A stretch of DNA of 63,395 bases, the filler included, from Octopus bimaculoides (taxonomy: Eukaryota), in NCBI RefSeq assembly GCF_001194135.2. It is 6 parts of 6 records of this genome, joined end to end, with 100 filler letters (N's around TTAATTAATTAA, not from the genome) between each part and the next. Parts side by side here need not be neighbours in the genome. Positions count along the whole stretch, not along the records: positions 28,831 to 40,854 come from NC_068986.1; 5 more parts are not named here. One strand, written 5' to 3'. The notes beneath the pieces are model-generated. The model worked only from the letters and a program-made list of their open reading frames with translations. It did no database searches and was not told where the DNA came from. Numbering within the stretch: the stretch's first letter is position 1; each line of letters starts with the position of its first letter. The translations under genes were made by a program, and so were the position numbers. Shown one piece after another: positions 14,334 through 40,854 of the stretch.

Positions 14334-14433
14334 NNNNNNNNNNNNNNNNNNNNNNNNNNNNNNNNNNNNNNNNNNNNTTAATTAATTAANNNNNNNNNNN
14401 NNNNNNNNNNNNNNNNNNNNNNNNNNNNNNNNN
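14334..14433. other. Assembly join spacer (44 N + TTAATTAATTAA + 44 N)
   Basis: Exactly 100 bp; the palindromic 12-mer has stop codons in all six frames. The same structure occurs five times. Confidence 0.95.
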
Positions 14434-14478
<45 letters not shown>

Positions 14479-15319
14479 ACGACATTGTCTAGCCAGTTGA
14501 CACTTATATCCATTATATTCTATGTAATCAACAATCAACGATCTAAACAGTCTGTCTATCCAATCATCATATTCAGACTGTGCCAGACTTGTCATCTTCT
14601 AAATGAGAGTTCCTCGGAAATAACTAATGGCGGCTAAGCCAAATAACCATATATTTACAGCTAACGACACAATCACCCCACTCCTAACTACTGCTACTTC
14701 AACACCAACAACAACAATATCAAAATCTGTTGATCATCTTGATCAACAGGAAAGATTTCACCGATACCGTGTTTTATATTTCGGTTTTTCGTTTTGGATT
14801 TAGCTGCTTTACATCCTTTGTTTTCTAAATTCCATTTATTGGTCTGCATTGTTTTGATAGTTAATGACGAAAACAACAAAGAAGAAAATCCAAAAATGCA
14901 GAAGAAAAAAAAGAAACGTCATGTCCGCCATAATTTCTAAATGCTTCATTTTCTAAATATATATTTTTTCTTCAAATTTTTCAGTTTTGTTTTTTTCTTT
15001 TAAAAAAAAATAACCAGGGATACTATAGATTATATGTAATTTTAAACTGTAGCCTTTATTCATATTTTATATATTTATATAGTTTTTCACAACACGTAAA
15101 AAAAGAGAATAAGATATCATTCGTTTACAACATTTATACGAGAAAATACGATATTTAAATACACAAGCTGGAAACGGATTCTTTTCGTTGTTTTATAGTT
15201 TTAACGCTTTTCTAGTTTTAGTATATATTTTCCTCTTATTGTTTGTACATTTTGTATTGTTACCGCTTGTTTCTTATTTATTTTTCCGGCTGTTGCTGCC
15301 GTTGTTTTGAGAATTACAT

Positions 15320-28830: not shown

Positions 28831-29039
28831 TTATTAATATATATATATATATATACATTTATGTATGTATATCCTTTTGTCTGTGATTGTTCATCATCAC
28901 TTGACAACCGATGTTAATGTGTTTAACTCCCCCGTAACTTAGTGGTTCAGCAAAAAGGACCGATAAAATAAGAACTAGGCTTACAAAGAATAAGGCCGCA
29001 GTCAAGAGACTAAAACAAGTATAAAAATAAAAGAATAAA

Positions 29040-29620
29040 CACTAACACACACACACACACACACACACGTCAGATGAAACCTTTCACGCAGCGCACAAAA
29101 CAAACTGGGAGGAACACTTGACACGTATACCAACATTACACACACACATATGCATATACACACACACACATACACACAAACACACACATACACAAACACT
29201 CACACATACACACACACAAAACACACACATACACACACACACAAAACACACACATACACACGCACACACACAAACACACATACACAAACACGCACACATG
29301 CACACACACGCACGCAAATCACACACATACACATACAGAGACACCCACACACATACATACCCATACACAAACACACACACACCCAACCACACACACATGC
29401 ACACAAACACACAAACACACACACACAAATTCTCACACACACATACACAAACACCCACAGACGCATACACACAAACACACATGCAAACACACACTCACAC
29501 TTAATACACACAAACACACACACACACACGCACACACATACGCACGAACAATCACATTAAAACACACACACAGACACACACACACACAGACACACACACA
29601 CACAGGCACACACACACTCT
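29040..29620. repeat. Long degenerate (CA)n microsatellite
   Basis: Direct reading of the repeats. Confidence 0.95.
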
Positions 29621-31071
29621 AAATACAAATACATATATACTATCAATTATACAGACAGCCACCAACTCGTATTACGAGCCAGTAGGTACAAACTGACTCA
29701 GATTAGGTTGGAGATCGCGAACATCACCACCACCACCACCACCACCATCGTCTCTGTCTTCACCCCCACACCATCACTGCGGCCACTATCGACGTCGCCT
29801 TCCCCCCACTTCCGCCTTTGCGAAAACCACAGCCTTGGTCATCACATTCGTAATTATTTCCACCCAGCCCGCCAACTTCATCATTGACTTCATTCCAAAC
29901 CTTAGTCCTTCACGTTCACCAAACCTACAACCACCACCAATACCACAACCAGCACCGCTACTAACACCACCACCANNNNNNNNNNNNNNNNNNNNNNNNN
30001 NNNNNNNNNNNNNNNNNNNNNNNNNNNNNNNNNNNNNNNNNNNNNNNNNNNNNNNNNNNNNNNNNNNNNNNNNNNNNNNNNNNNNNNNNNNNNNNNNNNN
30101 NNNNNNNNNNNNNNNNNNNNNNNNNNNNNNNNNNNNNNNNNNNNNNNNNNNNNNNNNNNNNNNNNNNNNNNNNNNNNNNNNNNNNNNNNNNNNNNNNNNN
30201 NNNNNNNNNNNNNNNNNNNNNNNNNNNNNNNNNNNNNNNNNNNNNNNNNNNNNNNNNNNNNNNNNNNNNNNNNNNNNNNNNNNNNNNNNNNNNNNNNNNN
30301 NNNNNNNNNNNNNNNNNNNNNNNNNNNNNNNNNNNNNNNNNNNNNNNNNNNNNNNNNNNNNNNNNNNNNNNNNNNNNNNNNNNNNNNNNNNNNNNNNNNN
30401 NNNNNNNNNNNNNNNNNNNNNNNNNNNNNNNNNNNNNNNNNNNNNNNNNNNNNNNNNNNNNNNNNNNNNNNNNNNNNNNNNNNNNNNNNNNNNNNNNNNN
30501 NNNNNNNNNNNNNNNNNNNNNNNNNNNNNNNNNNNNNNNNNNNNNNNNNNNNNNNNNNNNNNNNNNNNNNNNNNNNNNNNNNNNNNNNNNNNNNNNNNNN
30601 NNNNNNNNNNNNNNNNNNNNNNNNNNNNNNNNNNNNNNNNNNNNNNNNNNNNNNNNNNNNNNNNNNNNNNNNNNNNNNNNNNNNNNNNNNNNNNNNNNNN
30701 NNNNNNNNNNNNNNNNNNNNNNNNNNNNNNNNNNNNNNNNNNNNNNNNNNNNNNNNNNNNNNNNNNNNNNNNNNNNNNNNNNNNNNNNNNNNNNNNNNNN
30801 NNNNNNNNNNNNNNNNNNNNNNNNNNNNNNNNNNNNNNNNNNNNNNNNNNNNNNNNNNNNNNNNNNNNNNNNNNNNNNNNNNNNNNNNNNNNNNNNNNNN
30901 NNNNNNNNNNNNNNNNNNNNNNNNNNNNNNNNNNNNNNNNNNNNNCATAGAAGAAGTACTAGGCTTACAAAGAATAAGTCCTGGGGTCGATTTGTTCGAC
31001 TAAAGGCGGTGCTCCAGCATGGCCACAGTCAAATGACTGAAACAAATAAACGAGTAAGAGTAATATATATA

Positions 31072-32035
31072 AAGGGTGCGTACGATATTTGAGGACATAT
31101 TTATGTTTATAAAAGCAAAGAGTTACATAACATATAATAACTTTATTTATAAAAGAATTCTATAAGGATAAAAATAAACCTTCTCTTCTATAATGTTATT
31201 CAGTACAGCCACCTTCAGCTTCAACAACCGATTGTATTCGTGATCTAAACATGCTTGGATCCTTGTTCGTATTGGACATTACTCTGACTATGGCAGCTCT
31301 CAAAGAATCATTGGTGTCCTGCGCGTGTTCATTGACCTCTCTCTAAACAATGTAATAGTCTAATGGATTGAGATCTGTGGAATTAGGAGGCCAAATTTTA
31401 GTGGTCATGTGATCGTGAAAATTTTCAACCATCCATTCCTGCGTTACTAGAGCTTATGTGTGATAGTGTAGAGTCTTTCTGAAACACATATAGCCTTCCA
31501 TTGCATACACTGTCTATCCAGGGCTTAAAAATTGTTTCCAGGACCTCAATGTAGGTGGTAGAGTTAACTCTAAGGCCTTGTGGAAAGAAGTAAGGTGGCA
31601 TCACATGTCCTTCATTGCTGACAACCCCTAAAACCATGATAGTTGCAGGAAATTTTGTATGCATAACACTTGAAACTGCACATAACCATCTGTCATTTCT
31701 TCTGTTAACTTTTTGATTTTATTCGAAGATTTTCTCGTTTGCGAAAAACCAAATCAAATCTGCTGAATTTTTCAGTCTGTTTAAGAGCTTTTTACATCTG
31801 ATGTAGTGAATTTCTTTTGCTTTTTCGGACAAATTGACTTTTCCTCATCTTCGTGGACAACATTTCTGACTGTTCCTTCTGATACATGGAGATCTTTTGC
31901 AATATACTTCATGGATTTCCTGGAATTGTAATCAATGGTATGTTGAACTTGCTGGATAAATTCAGATGTTCTGATGATTTCAGAGCGTTTAGAATGCTTT
32001 TTATCCTGGTGATACGTTTCCATCTTCAATCTCTA
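31072..32035 (-). mobile_element. Tc1/mariner transposon remnant, maT (DD37D)-like
   Basis: Minus ORFs give IRTSEFIQQVQHTIDYNSRKSMKYIAKDLHVSEGTVRNVVHED (HTH) and TKFPATIMVLGVVSNEGHVMPPYFFPQGLRVNSTTYIEVLETIFKPWIDSVCNGRLYVFQKDS. Manual reading adds TDLNPLDYY and VVEAEGG. One TIR-like end (TA)aagggtgcgtacgatatttgaggac survives; the other is not seen. D-D spacing cannot be counted because of frameshifts. Confidence 0.85.
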
Positions 32036-33146
32036 GCTCCTTACAAACTTTCTAGACGAAAGATCTGGCAACTTAACAGAATGCTTCAACGAAGGTAAGT
32101 TCATTGTTATTTCGTGATCCGCCAAAAGTATCCAAAGATAACAAGAACCTAAGACATGGCATTGAAACGTTATAAATATAGACGAATGAGTTATATGGTA
32201 CTGCTACAAAAGTCTTTATTGTGATACAAACATGGTGCAGTCATGTATGTAGTATGTGCAACAACAATACGATTATGTAATGCATTATGCATCTCTCAAC
32301 TCATCAGGTTTACCAAATAAACAAGCGAGCTGTGACATGTTGATGAAATCAACAGATCATGTTTTTTAATGATCTGCTGATTCATCAAACAGACCCTTAA
32401 TGAGACAAGTGTAACTGTTTCACATACTCTGCAGTCTGTTTTTACTCTGTGTGTGTGTTGTGTGTGTTTGTATGTGTATAGGTATGGAATCCGGAAATTC
32501 TCTGGATTGCTGATTTTTCCGAACTAGGTGTTGTCAGTATGGTCAACACAGTCTAAATTTAAAACATAAAATTTACTTAAATGATTAAATGAAATACGAG
32601 TACTTGTACATCGGTGTGCATTAGTGCGGATTATAAGAGATTTCGGACTATCAAGGCCAAGAAAATTCAGTGATCTACCTGCGTGTGTGTGTGTGTATAC
32701 ATATATATATATCGTAGTTTTCCCTTCCTCCCATTTGTCTGTCTTTATATATATCTATCTATCAATCTCTCTATTTAACTCTTCTGTTGAACTTTTACCC
32801 TCCCTCCATTCTCCACTATTTCTCTGTTCCTTGCATTTTATTTTCTTAATTACGCATCGACTCTCTGTTGACATTTATATTTTTCTCCTGTGAAAGACGT
32901 GACCCGCCCTCCTGTTTACTTGCACACTTCTGCCAAACCAGAAACCGGTTTACTATTTATTGTTGTCATAACTCCAGTTCCATTATTTTTTTTTAAGCTG
33001 ATCAAGTATAAAGCTGGTTAGGTATTGCTGGAGCCACACCAACGCACCTTTCTGTTCGTCACCAAACTGTTTTAATGCGATTTCATAATATATGCACCAT
33101 GAAACACATCCTATAGGGAAGAAAACACTCAATTAATTATTTCTAC

Positions 33147-33185
<39 letters not shown>

Positions 33186-33404
33186 CCAGCGAGAGGGCTT
33201 TGCTTGTGATCACTCGTCTCACTAGAAATAACAGCCAAATCTCCCTTAAATTGCACTCTATCATCTTCCCTCTTAAACAAGATGATGATACATTGGATGG
33301 ATGTAGTGCTATATAGCCAAGACCGCCATGATATCAGTGGACAATACATGGATGAATAAGGCCATCTCATTGCGAACAAAAAGAGAGAAATCCTCAGTTC
33401 ATTG

Positions 33405-33720
33405 ATAGCCACCTATCAATGGAGGTGAATGCTGGATTATAAAGAAATTTGATAGAATTTGAAGAATATGAACAATAGTGTCTTAGAGACATTCTCAGTA
33501 TAAGCTACACGGATCAAAAAAGAAATGAGTGGGGTCTTCGCAAAATAAAATGCCAGGAAAGACTTAAATAATATCATGAGAAGAAAATGGATAACATCAA
33601 AGAAGCGATAACATCAAGGAAGCGAGTGGCGGAAATTTTACAGAACTATGCTGACTTTCACAGGTCAGATATGGTTAAAGGGCCGCAGTGGCTAGGGAAG
33701 AAGAGATATCTGTAAAACAT
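33405..33720 (+). mobile_element. RTE-clade LINE C-terminal fragment
   Basis: With frameshifts it reads GGECWIIKKFDR...CLRDILSISYTD...RNEW, similar to YG.E.W....E.RL..FE..CLR.IL.I.W.D.V.N of RTE ORFs. Confidence 0.55.
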
Positions 33721-33898
33721 TGGATATTCATGGGTGGAATGAATTTCATGAGAGGTCTCTTCGGCCAGGGCTTCCCTGAGGCTAAGCAACTATGAAAATA
33801 AAAACCACAACACACATTCACGCGCCCACAGTAGTTCTTTAATAAACTGGTATTTTATTTGATGGTTTCCCGGGATGAAAAAGACGCATGGTTTGAAC

Positions 33899-33970
33899 CA
33901 GAGCTGTGGATCCGGAGTCGTGGAGTCGGAGTCGGAGACGACAACAATGAAGGGGTAACCGGAGTCGGAG
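33899..33970. mobile_element. hAT-like MITE end with GGAGTC repeats
   Basis: cagagctgtggatccggagtcgtggagtcggagtcgg...ggagtcggag; truncated by a SINE B copy. Confidence 0.45.
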
Positions 33971-34135
33971 TTCTGAGTTCAAATTCCGCCGAGGTCGACT
34001 TTGCCTTTCATCCTTTCGGGGTTGATGAAATAATTACCAGTTACGCACTGGGGTTGATGTAATCGACTTAATCCTTTTGTCTGTCCTTGTTTGTCCCCTC
34101 TATGTTTAGCCCCTTGTGGGCAATAAAGAGAAATA
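33970..34135 (+). mobile_element. SINE family B, 5'-truncated
   Basis: Near-identical to 19315-19479. Confidence 0.9.
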
Positions 34136-35108
34136 AAGATATGTACGTATACAAAACGACACGCTTCTTCTCTGTCTCCGTCTAATAAATTCACTCACAA
34201 GGCATTGGTTAGCTCATCGCTATAGCAGAAGACACTTGCCCAAGGTGCCACGTTGTGCGAGGGAATCCGAAACCACGTGGTTGCAAAGCAAGCCTTTTAA
34301 CCACACCCCCATGCCTCATCTACCAGTCATATATTGGGGTAAATTTTCCCTGCCATTTTTTACTATTGCAAGTTCACGGTCCTTTGTTTATGTAAGCCCT
34401 CATTATATAAGCTTATAGACGTGCGGACTTCACTCATTTGTGTGCACTCGATTTCAGCACATGTTTCTCAGCCGGAGGCCTTATTCTGTATGGTTGTTTA
34501 GGTTGATTCAATGAATGTACACGAGTCATTGCGAGTATATACGTCTATGTATGCGTTTGTTTGCACGTGCATGTTTGTGTATATGTATGTGTATTTTTCT
34601 GTGTACCTTTGTGTGTTTACTTAAATGAACGTATTTCCTTGTATGCGTTCGTGTATAATTATTTCCGTGCGTGTGTGTATATACGTTTGAAAGAGTATGT
34701 ATATTTTAGTGTGAGTATGTGTTTTTTCGTGTGTGTTCGTATTTTTTCATGTTATTAAGTCCAAGTGTCCGAGTGTGTCTGTGTACAGTATTCGTGTCTT
34801 CGTCAAACATTCCAGAACTTTTAATATTGTTATCGAGAAGAAAAAAGAAAAATGGCGAACGACAGAATTTGATGACCGCCATATTGAAAAGTACTGATTC
34901 ACAGCAAACAACACTGGCCCACCCACTATTTTCCCGGTAATAACACACATATGTTAGCTATGAGACTTTCCTACATCATTCTCTCTGTCTCTCTCTGTCT
35001 TTCTTTCTTCTTTCCCTTTCTTTTTCCGCTTGTGTTTTTTTTCTCTTGGTTTTTCGTTTACATTTTGTAGAAGATATCTTTTGTCAATTTTTGAGAGTNN
35101 NNNNNNNN

Positions 35109-35178
<70 letters not shown>

Positions 35179-35359
35179 CGCACCAATGTTTTGATCGACC
35201 CGGAGCAACGGAAACCTAGGCGTCCACATTACCATCTGGTGCTGTTATTACGTACGTATCAACATTATAGCCACTCCCGTATGTATTGCAAATGACAGTT
35301 TTAATATTACAAAACGGTATAACATTTGCTGAGATATTCAAATATTATTGGTGTTACTA

Positions 35360-35905
35360 AAGTGGCGAACTGAGAGAATCTTTAGTGCGTCGAACAAAAT
35401 GGTTAGCAACATTTCTTCCGGCGTTTTCCGTATTCAAACGCTGCTGAGGTAAACTTTCACTTTCATCTTTTCGGGATCGATAAAATAAGTACCAGTTGCG
35501 CACTGAGGTTGATAGAATCGACTGACTCCTACCCCAGAAGTTCTGACCTTATGTCTATAGTAGAAAAGCGACGAGATAGCAGAATTCTTAGTGCGTCGTA
35601 CAAAATGTTTAGTGATGTTTCTTCTGGCTTTTTGCGTTCTGTATTCAAACCCTGCTAAGGTTAACCTTTCCTTTCATCTTTTCGGGCTCGATTTAATAAA
35701 TACTAGCTACGCACTGGGGTCGATGTAATCGACTGGCCCCTACCCTCAAAATATCTGGCCTCATGGCTACTGTAGAAAAGCGGCGAGATAGCAGAATCCT
35801 TAGGGCGTCGGACAAAATGTTTCCGGCTTTTTGCGTTTTGTGTTCAAACCCTACTGAGGTTGACTTCCAGTTTCATCATTTCAGGGTCGATAGAATAAAG
35901 TACCA
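35360..35905 (+). mobile_element. Head-to-tail trimer of a diverged family-B-like SINE
   Basis: Units of ~210 bp start at ~35360, ~35570 and ~35781, each reading (g)gcgag..gcagaa.c.ttag.gcgtcg.acaaaatg...ttcaaac...tttcatc.ttt.ggg.tcgat. Confidence 0.85.
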
Positions 35906-38519
35906 GAAAGGCTCAATTATAAGGATAACAACAACTGCAGCAGCAGCAAGAACAACGACAAGAACATGAGTCAACGCGGGAGCCTCTTCACAAGTGATTT
36001 TTTTTCAACCTTTTCCGGGAAGAGTACATTGAATAAAGTACTAAATGCATTATAACACACTATCAGCTTTTTAAGATGCTACACACACANNNNNNNNNNN
36101 NNNNNNNNNNNNNNNNNNNNNNNNNNNNNNNNNNNNNNNNNNNNNNNNNNNNNNNNNNNNNNNNNNNNNNNNNNNNNNNNNNNNNNNNNNNNNNNNNNNN
36201 NNNNNNNNNNNNNNNNNNNNNNNNNNNNNNNNNNNNNNNNNNNNNNNNNNNNNNNNNNNNNNNNNNNNNNNNNNNNNNNNNNNNNNNNNNNNNNNNNNNN
36301 NNNNNNNNNNNNNNNNNNNNNNNNNNNNNNNNNNNNNNNNNNNNNNNNNNNNNNNNNNNNNNNNNNNNNNNNNNNNNNNNNNNNNNNNNNNNNNNNNNNN
36401 NNNNNNNNNNNNNNNNNNNNNNNNNNNNNNNNNNNNNNNNNNNNNNNNNNNNNNNNNNNNNNNNNNNNNNNNNNNNNNNNNNNNNNNNNNNNNNNNNNNN
36501 NNNNNNNNNNNNNNNNNNNNNNNNNNNNNNNNNNNNNNNNNNNNNNNNNNNNNNNNNNNNNNNNNNNNNNNNNNNNNNNNNNNNNNNNNNNNNNNNNNNN
36601 NNNNNNNNNNNNNNNNNNNNNNNNNNNNNNNNNNNNNNNNNNNNNNNNNNNNNNNNNNNNNNNNNNNNNNNNNNNNNNNNNNNNNNNNNNNNNNNNNNNN
36701 NNNNNNNNNNNNNNNNNNNNNNNNNNNNNNNNNNNNNNNNNNNNNNNNNNNNNNNNNNNNNNNNNNNNNNNNNNNNNNNNNNNNNNNNNNNNNNNNNNNN
36801 NNNNNNNNNNNNNNNNNNNNNNNNNNNNNNNNNNNNNNNNNNNNNNNNNNNNNNNNNNNNNNNNNNNNNNNTATATATATATTATTTATATTTATATTGT
36901 TATTTAATTGAACGCCACGCATCCATTTCCAAGAAAGCTTATCTTCACCTATTTGATGCGACTTTACTCTATACTGTTTCTGCCTCCTTCTCTACTCCCC
37001 TTTTCCTACCCTCTCTCCCTCTTTCACCGTTTTTTATCTGCCTCTCTCTCTCTCTCATTTTCTCTCACTCGTAGCTCACACGTGACCATCGTCCATCTTT
37101 CTTTTCCTCACGTGACCATCTTTCTCTTCCTGCACGGACGTTCAAAGGACTGGATGATTTTTCTCTCTCTTCTATTTTTCCTCTTTTCGAAGAAAATCTT
37201 TCTCCTAACGCTCACTATTTTCCTTTCGTTCTGGTCTAACGACTATCCATGCTTGTTTTAGTTCGGTTTCTTTGTATGTCTCCTCTGTCCTGTTTTAGTT
37301 CCCAACTTTCACCATCCATAAATCCTAAATTTTATTTTAGAATTTATGGGAGCAACTCATATTGTCGTTAAATGCTCGAAATGAGGAGTAGATAGACAAC
37401 CGACAACTGATGAAGGGTCGTTTCTTTGTGTTGACTTCTGCTGTTTTACATTTTTTTCTCTCGTTGTTTGCGTATTTAACTCGTTTGTTTTCGTATTTCA
37501 TGTTGTTTGCGTAGGACTTAGTGCAAGTTTTCTACTATAGCCTCACGCCGATGAAATCCTTGTGAGAGTATATGGTGAACAGAAACTGAAGGAAGCCCCT
37601 CGCGTGTGTATCTGTTGTAGGGGAGGAGGTTAAATGGGTATTGAAATTATTTTGAAATAGGTGGTTGCAAGCATTGCTCCTAGCCGCCCGTCAAATTTAT
37701 TCAAATTGTACTCTGTTAAAGGTGGCATTTCACAAAGCAATCCCTGCTATAAAAAGAAAGTTGAATGTCATGGTTGGAACGGCGTTGATCACCAGTATAG
37801 TTAATTAAATAGGGTCTAGCTTTAAATTACAACATCAACAACTCCAACTCTACATCCTATCAGCCTGACCGCAGTCACCCCTGCTACCACCAACACCAGG
37901 ACCAATGCCAACACCACCTCAACCAAAAGCAAACACTACCGCCTACAAAAAAACGCAACAACTACAACTATATACACCGCTGATTCGTAGTGAATGGCTT
38001 GATCAGGTTTGTACAAAAAAAAACCTAAGCAGGTTAAAACAACAAAGCATGACAAAGAAGAATGTGGGAGGGAGTTAAGCGGAAGGGGCGAAAGAAGTAT
38101 GTGAAAGATAGCTAGAGTAAGGGGAGGAAATTCCCCAGCACAAGTAAAGTTTTTATATAGGCTTTTCAAAACTTCTGAGTGTGACTATTAATGTTGCTGG
38201 TGAGCGATAGAATGTACAGGAATTATTTGGTGGTTATGTTTTGTAATTAATTCTGTGTTGTGGGATTTAGTCTACATCGAAGATTACGTTGGAGAGAGAA
38301 TTTTTTTTTCTAAATCTATCTATGTAGTTGAGGTTGATAGGTAAAGAGTGGTAGAGAGAGAGAGAGAAAGAGAGAGAGGGGGGAGAGAGAGATAACAAGG
38401 GAACCAGAGGGGAGGAAAAAGAGGATAGAGAGAAGAAAACGGGGAAGGCAACAGAGAGAGAGAGAGAGCGTGTGTGTGTGTGCGTGAGAGAGAGAGTGTG
38501 TGTGTGTGTGCATAAGAAT

Positions 38520-38637
38520 AAGGGAGTAAAATAGATAGATAGATAGATACATACATACATGCATACATACATACATACATACATACATACATACATAGAG
38601 AAAGAGAGAAAGAGAAGAGAGAGGGGGAGAGAGGGGA

Positions 38638-38672
<35 letters not shown>

Positions 38673-38992
38673 CATACATACATACATACATACATACATA
38701 CATCACTTTGATGGCATACATACATACATACATACATACATACATACATACATACGTACATACATACATACATACATACATACATACATACATACGTACA
38801 TACATACATACATACATAAAGAAAGAGAGAGAGATAAGTGAAAGAGGGATAGATAGATATATAGAAAGATAGATAGATACATACATACATACATACATAC
38901 ATACATACATACGTACATACATACATACATACATACATACGTACATACATACATACATACATAAAGAAAGAGAGAGAGATAAGTGAAAGAGG

Positions 38993-39062
<70 letters not shown>
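38520..39062. repeat. Compound (TAGA)n/(TACA)n/(GA)n array with a duplicated ~140-bp unit
   Basis: taaagaaagagagagagataagtgaaagagggatagatagat occurs at ~38817 and ~38962. Confidence 0.9.
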
Positions 39063-39065
<3 letters not shown>

Positions 39066-40036
39066 GTAAAGAGGCAGGTGTTAAATTTTAGGTAGATTTA
39101 AACAAGAGTGGAGTAGGTAAATAAACAAGAGAGCCCAGTGAACGAGCAGGGGTGGGAAGGACTGGCTGTCAAACGAACGACTAGACGCATATACACACAC
39201 ACACACACACAGGCATACGAACACACACTGGCAAGCACACACACACATACATACACACACACATACACACTCGTAAAACACACACAGTTACACAGAAGAG
39301 AAACGCAAAGGACCAAATATAAACATTGACGCTCCAACGAGAAGAATGTGATTTCGTAGAGGCCTCGTTTCAAAACAAAGAAATTTTCTTCTTATGACAA
39401 CAAAGGACCTGCTTCAAACTTATTTTCAGAGCAGCGAGTTTATAGTGTTATACATATATACATATATATATGTAAATGATTTGGCAGTCAGGGAAAATTT
39501 ACGCCTCTGGGACTTCCTACTCACCCGTTGCTTTCGGGTGTGTTTCGATTATTACAAAATCAAACCCGAAATTGTTCTGCTTATCACGACTATTTACTGA
39601 TATTATTATTATTATTGTTGTTGTGGTTATTTTTATTACTTGTGTTATTGTTAGACCGGGATGGAGCTGTGAGTTACCAATAGTTGCTTTCGTGGTCGGT
39701 GACAGACAAGTATTGTTGTGGCGTGGTGATAATGTTGTTTGGACCACGTTGCTACTGTGACTCCTTTTGACTATTACTATCACTACTGTTGTTGCTACTG
39801 CTGTTGTTATTGGTGGCGGTGGATGTGGATGTGGTGGTGGCGGCGGCGGTGGTTGATCCGGCGTTGTTTTTGTTGCTTCTGCTGCTGTTATTTACGTCAT
39901 GTTGCATCGACTTAAACATCGAAAAAGAGGCGAAGAATGAAATTAATTGAGTTGGTAATTATGATCAGCTAGCGGGTTCGGAACCCCTCTTCTTGCAGAA
40001 GAATTTTTTTTATTTCAACAAAGGCTCAAGAGTGAC

Positions 40037-40487
40037 ATGATGTACGGAATATCTCACCTGCGAAACTTGGTCCCATATATTATCATCGTATTAACACTTT
40101 TCAATTTGTTATTGAATATCTCATTAGCAGAACATATCAGCGCTTCGGAGACCAATAAGGAATCTGATTCCGATCCTGTGAACAAGGAGAATCAACAAGA
40201 TACAACACTTTTCAGTGATTCGTCCACATCTGTCACCATGACATTTGCCGCTTTCACTGCAACCTCTCCAGCCGCCACGGAGAGTGACGATGAACAAAGT
40301 CAATGCAACCCTAAAATATCCCGTTGCCCAGGTAACAGGCTTCCATCACCAGAGGACTGCAGTTGCCTAGCAATGGCGGGTGAAAAATGTGGCTTTAATA
40401 CACGGAAACGATGTGACCAAAACTTAGGACTTAGGTGCATTCCAGAGAGGAAATCTTCGCTGAGCAAGAGCTACGGTGTTTGTCGCG
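40037..40487 (+). CDS. First coding exon of a secreted protein with an IGFBP/CCN-like N-terminal cysteine module
   Basis: An open frame of 150 codons plus 1 nt in otherwise repeat-filled DNA. It has a hydrophobic signal peptide (YIIIVLTLFNLLLNISLA|EH), an acidic S/T-rich spacer, then C.AMAGEKCG..T..RCD..LGLRC.........YGVC. The motif ends at the donor TGT CGC G|GTAAGC (intron from 40488, phase 1), as in exon-encoded IGFBP modules of CCN-type genes. The 173-aa ORF beyond this point is intron read-through. Confidence 0.85.
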
Positions 40488-40854
40488 GTAAGCCATTTCT
40501 TTATATATTGTTTTTAATCGACAGAAAATTATTGATTTTTGTATCTATTTTCCAGTAAGTTTATATAATACTTGATTTCTTTGTCGAAAAAAAAAAACTA
40601 TGAATAAGATTTCATGTCAAAATATCTGTCCAGCAATACACGTGACTTGTCAAAAAATCAATGCATTTGTCAACAAATTCGTCGCTCTGTCAATGTAAAA
40701 ATATATATGTATATATATAAATTTATATAAATGAGAAGATCAATATTTAAAATACCGATTTTATCAAGTGGCCAGCATGGGAATAAAAACCATCAAAAGT
40801 AATAATTAATCAAAATTATCTAAAATTATAATTTTAAATATATATATATATATA

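What the first reader, a model, noticed from the sequence alone, without database searches (positions are those of the whole stretch)
40037..40487. Secreted IGFBP/CCN-like protein with a symmetric reduction from 12 to 8 cysteines
Seen: signal peptide, then a ~55-aa acidic Ser/Thr spacer, then C-x6-C-x10-C-x-C-x7-C-x7-C-x7-C-x14-C ending at a phase-1 donor. Established: the IGFBP N-domain has 12 Cys with GCGCCxxC; its C-terminal subdomain (C9-C11, C10-C12) is the main IGF-contact site, and IGFBP6 naturally lacks two Cys. Inference: here GCGCCxxC has collapsed to DCSC, and two N-terminal Cys are also gone. That removes two whole ladder disulfides while keeping the C-x4-GE-x-C register and the binding subdomain, which looks selected rather than decayed. 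The module mixes IGFBP-type (CG..T.RC, GLRC) and CCN-type (CD-x3-GL-x-C, GVC) signatures, so it may be a lineage-specific insulin-peptide binder or a divergent CCN, CRIM1 or IGFBP7-like first module.
Basis: partly seen in the sequence, partly recalled or inferred. Interest (0 to 1): 0.72.

Follow-up and report, generated by a model that had tools for sequence, protein, structure and literature searches.

The report
Secreted 8-cysteine IGFBP-like first exon
This is a real, conserved first coding exon of a secreted protein whose cysteine-rich module is a trimmed, distant relative of the insulin-growth-factor-binding (IGFBP) N-terminal domain; the rest of the gene lies outside the piece, so what it binds is unknown.

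Summary
Window 40037-40487 (+) is an ATG-started reading frame. It encodes a signal peptide (aa 1-31), a 58-aa acidic Ser/Thr spacer and eight Cys spaced C-x6-C-x10-C-x-C-x7-C-x7-C-x7-C-x14-C. It ends at a phase-1 donor, CG|GTAAGC.

The exon is under selection. An orthologue in a related species is 84% identical, has no indels in the coding part, keeps all 8 Cys, and gives dN/dS 0.28. Two more distant relatives share the same layout, Cys frame and donor position.

The IGFBP reading is partly supported:
- A profile of 17 Pfam PF00219-labelled domains scores the module 17.6 bits. The best of 2000 shuffles scores 13.7, human IGFBP7 17.5-19.9 and spider SIBD-1 about 12.
- hhalign (P 7.5e-5) maps the eight Cys onto IGFBP Cys 3, 4, one or two of the GCGCCxxC cluster, and 9-12.
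- Both AlphaFold models place SIBD-1 second in PDB-wide Foldseek searches, without significance.

Formal family features are missing: there are not 12 Cys, there is no GCGCCxxC, and no precomputed Pfam hit is on record. The IGF-contact loop is the least conserved part of the family, shrinking from 14 to 4 residues, so ligand binding is unproven. No downstream exons or transcripts were found. Verdict: a new variant of a known kind, of moderate interest.

The parts
39612..40036 (+). Conserved 5' flank, taken as promoter or 5'UTR. It holds a near-invariant block at 39853-39892 and an acceptor-like polypyrimidine+CAG at 39984-39997.
   Evidence: About 85% identical to L001/L005, with indels that are not multiples of three near the ATG. 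Its role is inferred.
40037..40129 (+). Start codon and signal peptide (aa 1-31), with predicted cleavage SLA|EH.
   Evidence: Sequence reading. The orthologue keeps the hydrophobic core and ISLAEH. This segment gives dN/dS 0.46. No SignalP was run.
40130..40303 (+). Acidic Ser/Thr-rich spacer (aa 32-89), probably disordered and O-glycosylated.
   Evidence: Composition read: 12 D/E and 20 S/T in 58 aa. This segment gives dN/dS 0.20 against the orthologue. Glycosylation is inferred.
40304..40483 (+). Eight-Cys module (Cys90 to Cys149), a reduced IGFBP-N/IB-like domain.
   Evidence: IGFBP profile 17.6 bits against a shuffle maximum of 13.7. hhalign P 7.5e-5. AF2 pLDDT 75, with SIBD-1 ranked second in Foldseek.
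40484..40487 (+). Arg150 and the first base of codon 151 (Gly); end of the exon, phase 1.
   Evidence: C-x-G before the donor is invariant in all relatives.
40488..40493 (+). 5' splice donor GTAAGC.
   Evidence: GTRAG stands at the same codon position in L001, L002 and L003. Identity drops and indels and stops appear just beyond it.
40494..40854 (+). Start of the intron, cut off by the edge of the piece.
   Evidence: 75% identity with indels against L001. The ORF that the gene caller placed here in L004-L007 is not conserved.

Best explanation
Window 40037-40487 is the first coding exon of a multi-exon gene for a secreted protein. The signal peptide is removed after Ala31. An acidic, Ser/Thr-rich, probably O-glycosylated spacer then presents a compact 60-residue module held by four disulphides.

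The module is a divergent, trimmed descendant of the IGFBP N-terminal (IB) domain found in IGFBPs, CCN proteins, HTRA1, IGFBP7, ESM1 and arthropod SIBD. Its C-terminal half (C-LAMAGEK-CG-FNTRKR-C-DQNLGLR-C-...YGV-C) matches the 'mini-IGFBP' beta-sheet subdomain with its two disulphides. Its N-terminal half is a two-rung rather than four-rung disulphide ladder. The inferred pairing is C90-C108 and C97-C110, then C118-C134 and C126-C149.

It most likely acts as an extracellular ligand-binding head, for an insulin-like peptide, another growth factor or a matrix ligand. This head is spliced in phase 1 onto further, still unknown, modules.

Shown: the exon, its selection, the conserved exon boundary, and a remote IB-type similarity. 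Inferred: the disulphide pairing, glycosylation, ligand binding and downstream architecture.
For: - Exon anatomy is read directly from the sequence.
- Orthologue P0001/P0005: 84% aa identity, 89% nt identity, no coding indels, intron 75%. dN/dS is 0.28 and all Cys are kept.
- Distant relatives P0003 (with P0006-8) and P0004 share the layout: signal, spacer, C-x6-CPGNR-x6-C-x-C-x7-CG-x6-CD-x2-LGL-x-C, and a phase-1 donor straight after C-x-G.
- hhalign of the family against eight IGFBP, CCN, HTRA1, IGFBP7 and ESM1 domains gives P 7.5e-5 over 58 columns. The real score is 23.3; 300 column shuffles give mean 3.7 and maximum 12.0.
- An HMM of 17 PF00219-labelled domains scores the module 17.6 bits, with a per-sequence E of 1.8e-7. 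The best of 2000 residue shuffles scores 13.7.
- The same profile run on the whole PDB reports only IB-domain chains. IGFBP7 scores 17.5-19.9 bits and SIBD-1 about 12 bits. That search ran with HMMER's default bias filter, which also drops this module, so it calibrates score levels rather than proving specificity.
- Among 604 six-frame ORF pieces of the window piece and L003, this exon is the only hit to that profile.
- Two independent AF2 models (pLDDT 75) each place spider SIBD-1 second among 350,542 PDB chains, with TM 0.43-0.48.
- The C1-C5, C2-C6, C3-C7, C4-C8, C9-C11, C10-C12 pairing of IB domains is as described in PMC7866140.
Against: - No hit in PDB sequence searches with the module or with the family profile.
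- No precomputed Pfam family is on record for P0001, P0003, P0004 or P0005. HMMER's bias filter alone removes the match, which may explain this.
- The Foldseek matches are not significant (E 1-3.5). Unrelated small disulphide-rich folds rank first: procolipase and AmFPI-1.
- The distant relatives on their own do not reach the IGFBP profile: 1.5 bits, and hhalign P 0.049 covering the C-terminal half only.
- The IGF-contact loop is not conserved within the family.
- No transcript, downstream exon or ligand evidence was found.
Confidence: 0.62

Rival explanations
1. Neuroparsin-like hormone precursor. Neuroparsins are invertebrate Cys-rich hormones related to the IB domain. They lack GCGCCxxC and carry C-A-K-G-x-G-x-x-CG and C-G-x-G-[ML]-x-C motifs. 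On this reading the remaining Cys would sit in exon 2 and the product would be a secreted hormone, not a binding protein.
For: The literature reports neuroparsin homologues in most mollusc classes and notes their similarity to the IGFBP N-domain (PMC8398477 and PMC6425005). Four Cys before the x7-CG motif, as here, is closer to neuroparsin (recalled from memory, not tested) than to the eight in canonical IB domains. The exon ends without a stop, so more Cys may follow.
Against: A 58-aa spacer between the signal peptide and the Cys module, with no dibasic site, is unlike neuroparsin precursors (knowledge). The motif search in the mollusc neuropeptide supplement found nothing, but the large files were cut when stored. 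No neuroparsin sequence was available for a real test.
Confidence: 0.12
2. An unrelated small disulphide-rich fold, for example a protease-inhibitor-like or toxin-like module, whose Cys spacing and few Gly/Leu positions resemble IB by convergence.
For: The top Foldseek hits are procolipase (E 0.72) and the insect fungal protease inhibitor AmFPI-1 (E 0.38, probability 0.80). There is no PDB or Pfam sequence hit with default settings. The distant relatives score about 1 bit on the IGFBP profile.
Against: The ordered match covers 58-65 columns including non-Cys positions (A-x-x-GE-x-CG, T, GLRC-x-P, GVC). It beats all 300 column shuffles against the 8-domain set, all but 1 of 200 against the 17-domain set, and all 2000 residue shuffles. 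SIBD-1 comes up second for two different models.
Confidence: 0.17
3. An unspliced small peptide gene. On this reading translation runs through GGT AAG and stops soon after, giving a single-domain product, possibly C-terminally processed at Gly-Lys.
For: In-frame stops follow within 1-22 codons in all loci: CVGK*, CKGE*, CRGKPFP*.
Against: What is conserved after the Gly is GTRAG(T), not an amino acid (Lys versus Glu). Tail length varies from 1 to 22 residues. The stops in L002 and L003 arise from the donor consensus itself (GTGAGTGA, GTAAGTAA). Identity collapses straight after the donor.
Confidence: 0.05
4. A chance ORF or decayed pseudo-exon in repeat-rich DNA.
For: The piece is full of microsatellite-derived ORFs, and no transcript was found.
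Against: The exon is conserved without indels, gives dN/dS 0.28, keeps all Cys, and has relatives in other taxa with the same exon boundary.
Confidence: 0.03

Closest known systems
IGFBP N-terminal (IB) domain, Pfam PF00219 / SMART IB, as in vertebrate IGFBP1-7, ESM1 and HTRA1
   Same: A signal peptide and the Cys module share one exon. The C-terminal subdomain register is C-[AL]-x3-G-E-x-CG-x2-T-x2-3-C-x2-4-GLRC-x-P ... G-V-C. The module scores on a PF00219-derived profile at the level of IGFBP7.
   Different: It has 8 Cys rather than 12. GCGCCxxC is replaced by DCSC with a 4-residue deletion, and the first two Cys are absent. A long acidic spacer precedes the module. The loop equivalent to IGFBP-5 Lys68-Leu75 is shortened. 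No Pfam hit is on record.
CCN family (CCN1/CYR61, CCN2/CTGF) and CRIM1 first module
   Same: It shares C-P-x-G after the second retained Cys, the seven-residue CD-x3-GL-x-C loop and G-V-C. The exon ends two residues after the last Cys, as in module-per-exon CCN genes (gene structure from knowledge; motifs from the and 40 alignments).
   Different: CCN genes put the signal peptide in a separate exon and have the full 12 Cys. The VWC, TSP1 and CT modules that define CCN could not be looked for, because the downstream part is missing.
Arthropod single insulin-binding-domain proteins (SIBD-1 of Cupiennius salei, PDB 3ZXB/3ZXC) and mollusc perlustrin
   Same: These are invertebrate secreted IB-type modules. 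SIBD-1 is the only recurrent structural neighbour of both AF2 models.
   Different: The SIBDs studied in shrimp and vertebrate IGFBP1-5 have 12 Cys and CGCCxxC (PMC7866140). SIBD proteins are single-domain, whereas this exon ends at a donor. The Foldseek E-values are not significant.
IGFBP-6
   Same: It is a natural IB domain with fewer Cys (10) (PMC7866140).
   Different: IGFBP-6 loses one pair only and keeps a C-terminal thyroglobulin domain. Here two pairs are missing.
Neuroparsins / ovary ecdysteroidogenic hormone
   Same: They are invertebrate IB-related Cys-rich secreted proteins without GCGCCxxC, and are present in molluscs.
   Different: Neuroparsins have 12 Cys with a distinct C-terminal CxCxxCxxC cluster and no long pro-spacer (knowledge). 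This was not tested here.

Membership tests
IGFBP N-terminal domain (PF00219 / PROSITE IGFBP_N) | Twelve conserved Cys forming six disulphides | tested here: not met
   Eight Cys in the window, in the orthologue and in the distant relatives.
IGFBP N-terminal domain (PF00219 / PROSITE IGFBP_N) | GCGCCxxC signature (PROSITE [GP]-C-[GSET]-[CE]-[CA]-x2-C-[ALP]-x6-C, recalled from memory) | tested here: not met
   The sequence reads E-D-C-S-C-L-A-M-A-G-E-K-C. Profile alignments place a 4-residue gap here.
IGFBP N-terminal domain (PF00219 / PROSITE IGFBP_N) | Mini-IGFBP subdomain register C-A-x3-G-[EQ]-x-CG ... C-x2-GL-x-C ... G-x-C | tested here: met
   C-LAMAGEK-CG-FNTRKR-C-DQNLGLR-C-x11-YGV-C aligns column for column. 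CG, CD, LGL and the flanking Cys are invariant in the family.
IGFBP N-terminal domain (PF00219 / PROSITE IGFBP_N) | Significant match to the family profile | tested here: inconclusive
   A surrogate profile of 17 PF00219-labelled domains gives 17.6 bits, against a shuffle maximum of 13.7, IGFBP7 at 17.5-19.9 and SIBD-1 at about 12. The match appears only with the bias filter off. No precomputed Pfam hit is on record for P0001, P0003, P0004 or P0005. Pfam itself could not be run.
IGFBP N-terminal domain (PF00219 / PROSITE IGFBP_N) | IB fold: disulphide ladder plus three-stranded sheet | tested here: inconclusive
   AF2 pLDDT is 75, with short strands in the C-terminal half. SIBD-1 ranks second twice, with TM 0.43-0.48 and E 1-3.5.
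IGFBP N-terminal domain (PF00219 / PROSITE IGFBP_N) | Binds IGF, insulin or insulin-like peptides | not testable with these tools
   From the alignment, the equivalents of the IGFBP-5 contact residues are Val49 to Phe, Tyr50 to Asn and Pro62 kept, with Lys68-Ala72 deleted. The loop is 4 residues long in the distant relatives.
CCN family | IB module followed by VWC, TSP1 and cystine-knot modules | not testable with these tools
   The piece ends 367 bases into the intron. No exon is recognisable in the 10 kb downstream of the relative in L003. No transcripts were found.
Neuroparsin | About 12 Cys including a C-terminal C-x-C-x2-C-x2-C cluster, with the mature peptide directly after the signal peptide | not tested
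   Only 8 Cys are visible in this exon, and a 58-aa spacer follows the signal peptide. No neuroparsin sequences were at hand.

The most novel reading that the evidence does not exclude
A lineage-restricted family, found here in only a few related taxa, has remodelled the IB domain into a minimal four-disulphide module with a two-rung ladder and a variable 'contact' loop. It uses this module either as a new binder of the animals' own insulin-like peptides or as a secreted signalling molecule in its own right. The family's conserved CPGNR and A-x-A-x-E-x-CG surface, rather than the classical IGF-contact loop, would be the functional site.
Probability: 0.2. Interest if true: 0.55.

Novelty: new variant of a known kind. 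Interest (0 to 1): 0.36.

Why it matters
In the one paper read on the point, vertebrate IGFBP1-5 and the shrimp IGFBP and SIBD proteins studied have 12 Cys and IGFBP-6 has 10 (PMC7866140).

That would show which part of the ladder is dispensable for folding. It would also give a small, tractable module for asking how invertebrates buffer insulin-like peptides. For genome annotation, it shows that such modules can be missed by default HMMER or Pfam runs because of the composition-bias filter.

If the module instead belongs to a larger CCN-, CRIM1- or IGFBP7-like protein, it is simply a divergent orthologue and of routine interest.

Tried and rejected
- Word-indexed protein search with the whole exon found only the orthologue P0001. 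The same search with the family alignment found nothing.
- The exhaustive HMMER search of 1.84 billion representatives found only P0001, P0003, P0004 and one spurious bacterial repeat protein, P0002.
- PDB sequence searches with the module and with the family profile gave no hit at E <= 10.
- NCBIfam gave only noise.
- The JGI metagenome scan found no relatives.
- An exact look-up of the window's read-through ORF was not on record, so no extra downstream DNA could be fetched.
- The 10 kb downstream of the relative in L003 was scanned for Cys-rich or other exons, and both loci were scanned for tandem copies. None was found.
- The downstream ORF that the gene caller placed in L004-L007 is intron sequence and is not conserved in the window.
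- Cluster members are all short genomic contigs, with no transcripts.
- Literature and supplement searches for cephalopod IGFBP or neuroparsin, and for the CPGNR and LGLRC motifs, gave nothing specific.
- The minus-strand ORF 39752-39919 was considered as a divergent gene and rejected, because the reading frame is not conserved.
- Rfam and tRNA scans of the piece were empty.
- The taxon of the window and of the relatives could not be established. The window and L003 share only microsatellites.

Full report
OBSERVATION. The piece (28831-40854) is AT-rich, microsatellite-laden eukaryotic DNA with three N gaps. At 40037 an ATG opens a frame that runs to 40487 and, if read through, stops at 40558.

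The product starts with MMYGISHLRNLVPYIIIVLTLFNLLLNISLA|EH. This has a basic n-region, a hydrophobic core and small residues at -3/-1. A 58-aa spacer follows (aa 32-89) with 12 Asp/Glu and 20 Ser/Thr.

Cys then stand at aa 90, 97, 108, 110, 118, 126, 134 and 149. Only the spacer length (58 aa, not about 55) differs.

IS IT A REAL EXON? A word-indexed search of 5.8 billion proteins found one relative, P0001, 84% identical. It lies on short genomic contigs from a set of sequencing runs (L001, L004-L007).

- Aligning L001 with the window gives 89.4% identity and no indel over the 451 coding bases. The conserved 5' flank is 84.5% identical, and the first 213 intron bases are 75% identical with 17 gapped positions.
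- Nei-Gojobori dN/dS is 0.28 overall: 0.46 for the signal peptide, 0.20 for the spacer and 0.26 for the Cys module. All eight Cys are kept.
- Upstream of the ATG, indels of 1, 2 and 4 nt break any frame, so coding begins at 40037.
- Downstream of the donor, the read-through tails differ: 22 codons in the window and 4 in L001.

A SMALL FAMILY WITH A CONSERVED EXON BOUNDARY. An exhaustive HMMER search of 1.84 billion cluster representatives with aa 84-150 found, besides P0001, two distant relatives. These are P0003 (E 2.5e-5) and P0004 (E 5.2e-5). A spurious hit to a bacterial repeat protein, P0002, also appeared.

- P0003, with near-identical P0006-8, lies on short Logan contigs. P0004 lies on a 765-kb ENA contig. 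L002 and L003 align with each other at 65% nucleotide identity.
- Both relatives have a hydrophobic leader, a spacer and the same Cys frame, with the last loop cut from 14 to 4 residues. Their spacers are different and share KKDV[LR]SFWRE.
- Invariant family positions are C-x6-CPGNR-x2-S-x3-C-x-C-x-A-x-A-x3-CG-x4-K-x-CD-x2-LGL-x-C ... C-x-G.
- In both relatives the frame meets a donor directly after C-x-G, in phase 1: tgc aaa g|gtgagt and tgt gta g|gtaagt.
- What is conserved there is GTRAG(T), not the amino acid (Lys or Glu). The in-frame stops that follow arise from the donor consensus itself. This makes a splice donor far more likely than a translated C-terminus.

WHAT IS THE MODULE? Direct sequence searches of the PDB with the module or with the four-sequence profile gave nothing at E <= 10. 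No Pfam family is on record for any family member. I therefore tested the IGFBP idea in four ways.

(i) Profile against profile. I aligned eight IB domains as bait. IGFBP3, 4 and 5 were checked against PDB chains.
- hhalign of the family against this set gives 62% probability and P 7.5e-5 over 58 columns.
- The first two Cys fall on IB Cys 3 and 4. There is a 4-residue gap inside GCGCCxxC. The last five Cys fall on IB Cys 8-12.
- In my own run, the real score of 23.3 compares with a mean of 3.7, SD 2.3 and maximum 12.0 for 300 column shuffles, and 7.9 for the reversed alignment.

(ii) A profile from tool-derived sequences. With the bait I fetched 120 proteins carrying the PF00219 label and kept 17 domains below 75% identity to each other.
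- Their HMM scores the window module at 17.6 bits (per-sequence E 1.8e-7) and the orthologue at 17.2 bits.
- The distant relatives score only 1.5 and -0.2 bits.
- The best of 2000 residue shuffles of the module scores 13.7, with a mean of -1.8.
- hhalign against these 17 vertebrate domains is weaker: score 22.7 against a shuffle mean of 11.2, with 1 of 200 shuffles as high. It covers only the C-terminal half.

(iii) Calibration. The same 17-sequence profile run on 177,635 distinct PDB sequences reports only IB-domain chains. IGFBP3, 4 and 5 score above 100 bits, HTRA1 35.7, IGFBP7 17.5-19.9 and spider SIBD-1 12.1-12.3.
- The window module therefore scores like human IGFBP7 and above an accepted invertebrate IB protein.
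- One caveat applies. With default settings HMMER discards the window module at the composition-bias filter alone; it passes the MSV, Viterbi and Forward filters with --nobias.
- This weakens the 'no false positives' reading. It may also explain the absent Pfam annotation.
- Among 604 six-frame ORF pieces of the window piece and L003, with filters off, this exon is the only hit.

(iv) Structure. AlphaFold2 models of the window module and of the P0003-type module both reach a mean pLDDT of 75, with short beta-strands in the C-terminal half.
- PDB-wide Foldseek gives no significant match.
- SIBD-1 is second in both searches: 3zxc_B (probability 0.60, TM 0.43) and 3zxb_B (TM 0.48 over the full length).
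- Unrelated small disulphide-rich proteins rank first, namely procolipase and AmFPI-1.

Taken together, remote homology to the IB domain is the best-supported reading. It is strongest for the C-terminal 'mini-IGFBP' half and for the window-type members. I put it at about 0.6-0.65.

THE 12-TO-8 REDUCTION. IB domains pair C1-C5, C2-C6, C3-C7, C4-C8, C9-C11 and C10-C12 (PMC7866140; this matches my recollection of the IGFBP-4 numbering).
- The alignments agree that C1 and C2 are absent and that C3, C4 and C9-C12 are present.
- They disagree on whether the C-S-C pair corresponds to C5 and C8 (window) or to C7 and C8 (orthologue).
- Keeping C3 and C4 predicts that their partners C7 and C8 are kept.
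- It is still untested. I had no access to model coordinates, and no experimental data exist.

FUNCTION. The IGFBP-5 residues known to contact IGF are Val49, Tyr50, Pro62 and Lys68-Leu75 (knowledge; the numbering fits the 7UFG sequence).
- In the alignment these correspond to Phe, Asn, Pro and a loop with a 5-residue deletion.
- In the distant relatives that loop is only 4 residues long, and the 49/50/62 equivalents are Tyr-Glu/Tyr-Asn and Asn.
- The classical contact surface is thus the least conserved part of the family. The conserved non-Cys residues lie elsewhere: CPGNR, A-x-A-x3-CG, K-x-CD and LGL.
- Binding of an insulin-like peptide remains a reasonable guess by analogy with SIBD and IGFBP-rP proteins, but conservation does not support it.

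ARCHITECTURE. The exon ends two residues after the last Cys, in phase 1, as expected for a shuffled extracellular module. The next exon is outside the piece.
- No exon is recognisable in the 10 kb downstream of the relative in L003.
- There are no tandem copies, no transcripts in the protein collections, no JGI metagenome relatives, and no record of the window's own ORF that could have given more flank.
- CCN-, CRIM1-, IGFBP7-, HtrA-, SIBD- and neuroparsin-like architectures therefore all remain open. Mollusc neuroparsins are documented and are IB-related, and I keep this as the main rival.

NOVELTY AND VERDICT. This is a real, selected first coding exon of a secreted protein with a reduced IB-like module. 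It fails the formal family signatures (12 Cys, GCGCCxxC, recorded Pfam hit), so I do not file it as a canonical IGFBP domain. It most likely descends from one and folds like one. I rate it a new variant of a known kind, of moderate interest (0.36). It would be more interesting if the four-disulphide topology and an insulin-like ligand were demonstrated, and routine if it proves to be the divergent head of a known multi-module protein.

Noticed in passing
window 39853-39892, within the conserved flank 39612-40036: A block of about 40 nt (TTGATCCGGCGTTGTTTTTGTTGCTTCTGCTGCTGTT...) is almost identical between the window and the orthologous contigs, more so than the coding exon. It follows a (GGN)n repeat that differs by 12- and 21-nt indels. 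A minus-strand ORF (39752-39919, 55 aa, N/S/T-rich) overlaps it but is not conserved as a reading frame. It may be a promoter or 5'UTR element.
   Followed up: partly
window 39984-39997: A polypyrimidine tract plus CAG (cctcttcttgcag|aag) lies 39 nt upstream of the ATG and is kept as ...cttcacgcag|aag in the orthologue. It looks like a 3' splice site, so an upstream non-coding exon may exist.
   Followed up: no
window 31425-32029 (-): Two adjacent minus-strand ORFs look like a decayed Tc1/mariner-type transposase: an HTH-like part and a ...VFQKDSTLSH... part. A similar mariner-like fragment lies in L003 at 14389-14634.
   Followed up: no
window 35375-35906 and 33956-34079: A SINE-like unit of about 211 nt is present as 2.6 tandem copies, with one dispersed partial copy 1.45 kb upstream (66-82% identity). 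There is no Rfam or tRNA match.
   Followed up: partly
window 29138-29617, 38531-38963, 38993-39065; N runs 29976-30945, 35099-35108, 36090-36871: Long (AC)n, (ATAC)n and (GATA)n microsatellites give rise to all other long ORFs in the piece. Assembly gaps interrupt the region upstream of the gene.
   Followed up: yes
L002 349-480 and L003 10467-10560 (spacers of P0003 and P0004): The distant relatives replace the acidic Ser/Thr spacer with a basic one that shares KKDV[LR]SFWRE-x-N-x2-NS, including a Lys-Lys that could be a processing site. The pro-region may therefore have its own function in those taxa.
   Followed up: no
window 40286-40486 (method note): HMMER's default composition-bias filter alone removes the 17.6-bit match of this module to an IGFBP profile; with --nobias it passes all other filters. 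Reduced Cys-rich domains of this kind may be missed systematically in precomputed Pfam annotation.
   Followed up: yes
P0002 (not in the window): A 1515-aa bacterial protein made of about 12 near-identical Cys-containing repeats matched the module at E 1e-20 through repetition. It was judged spurious, with 32% identity over 49 residues per repeat.
   Followed up: no
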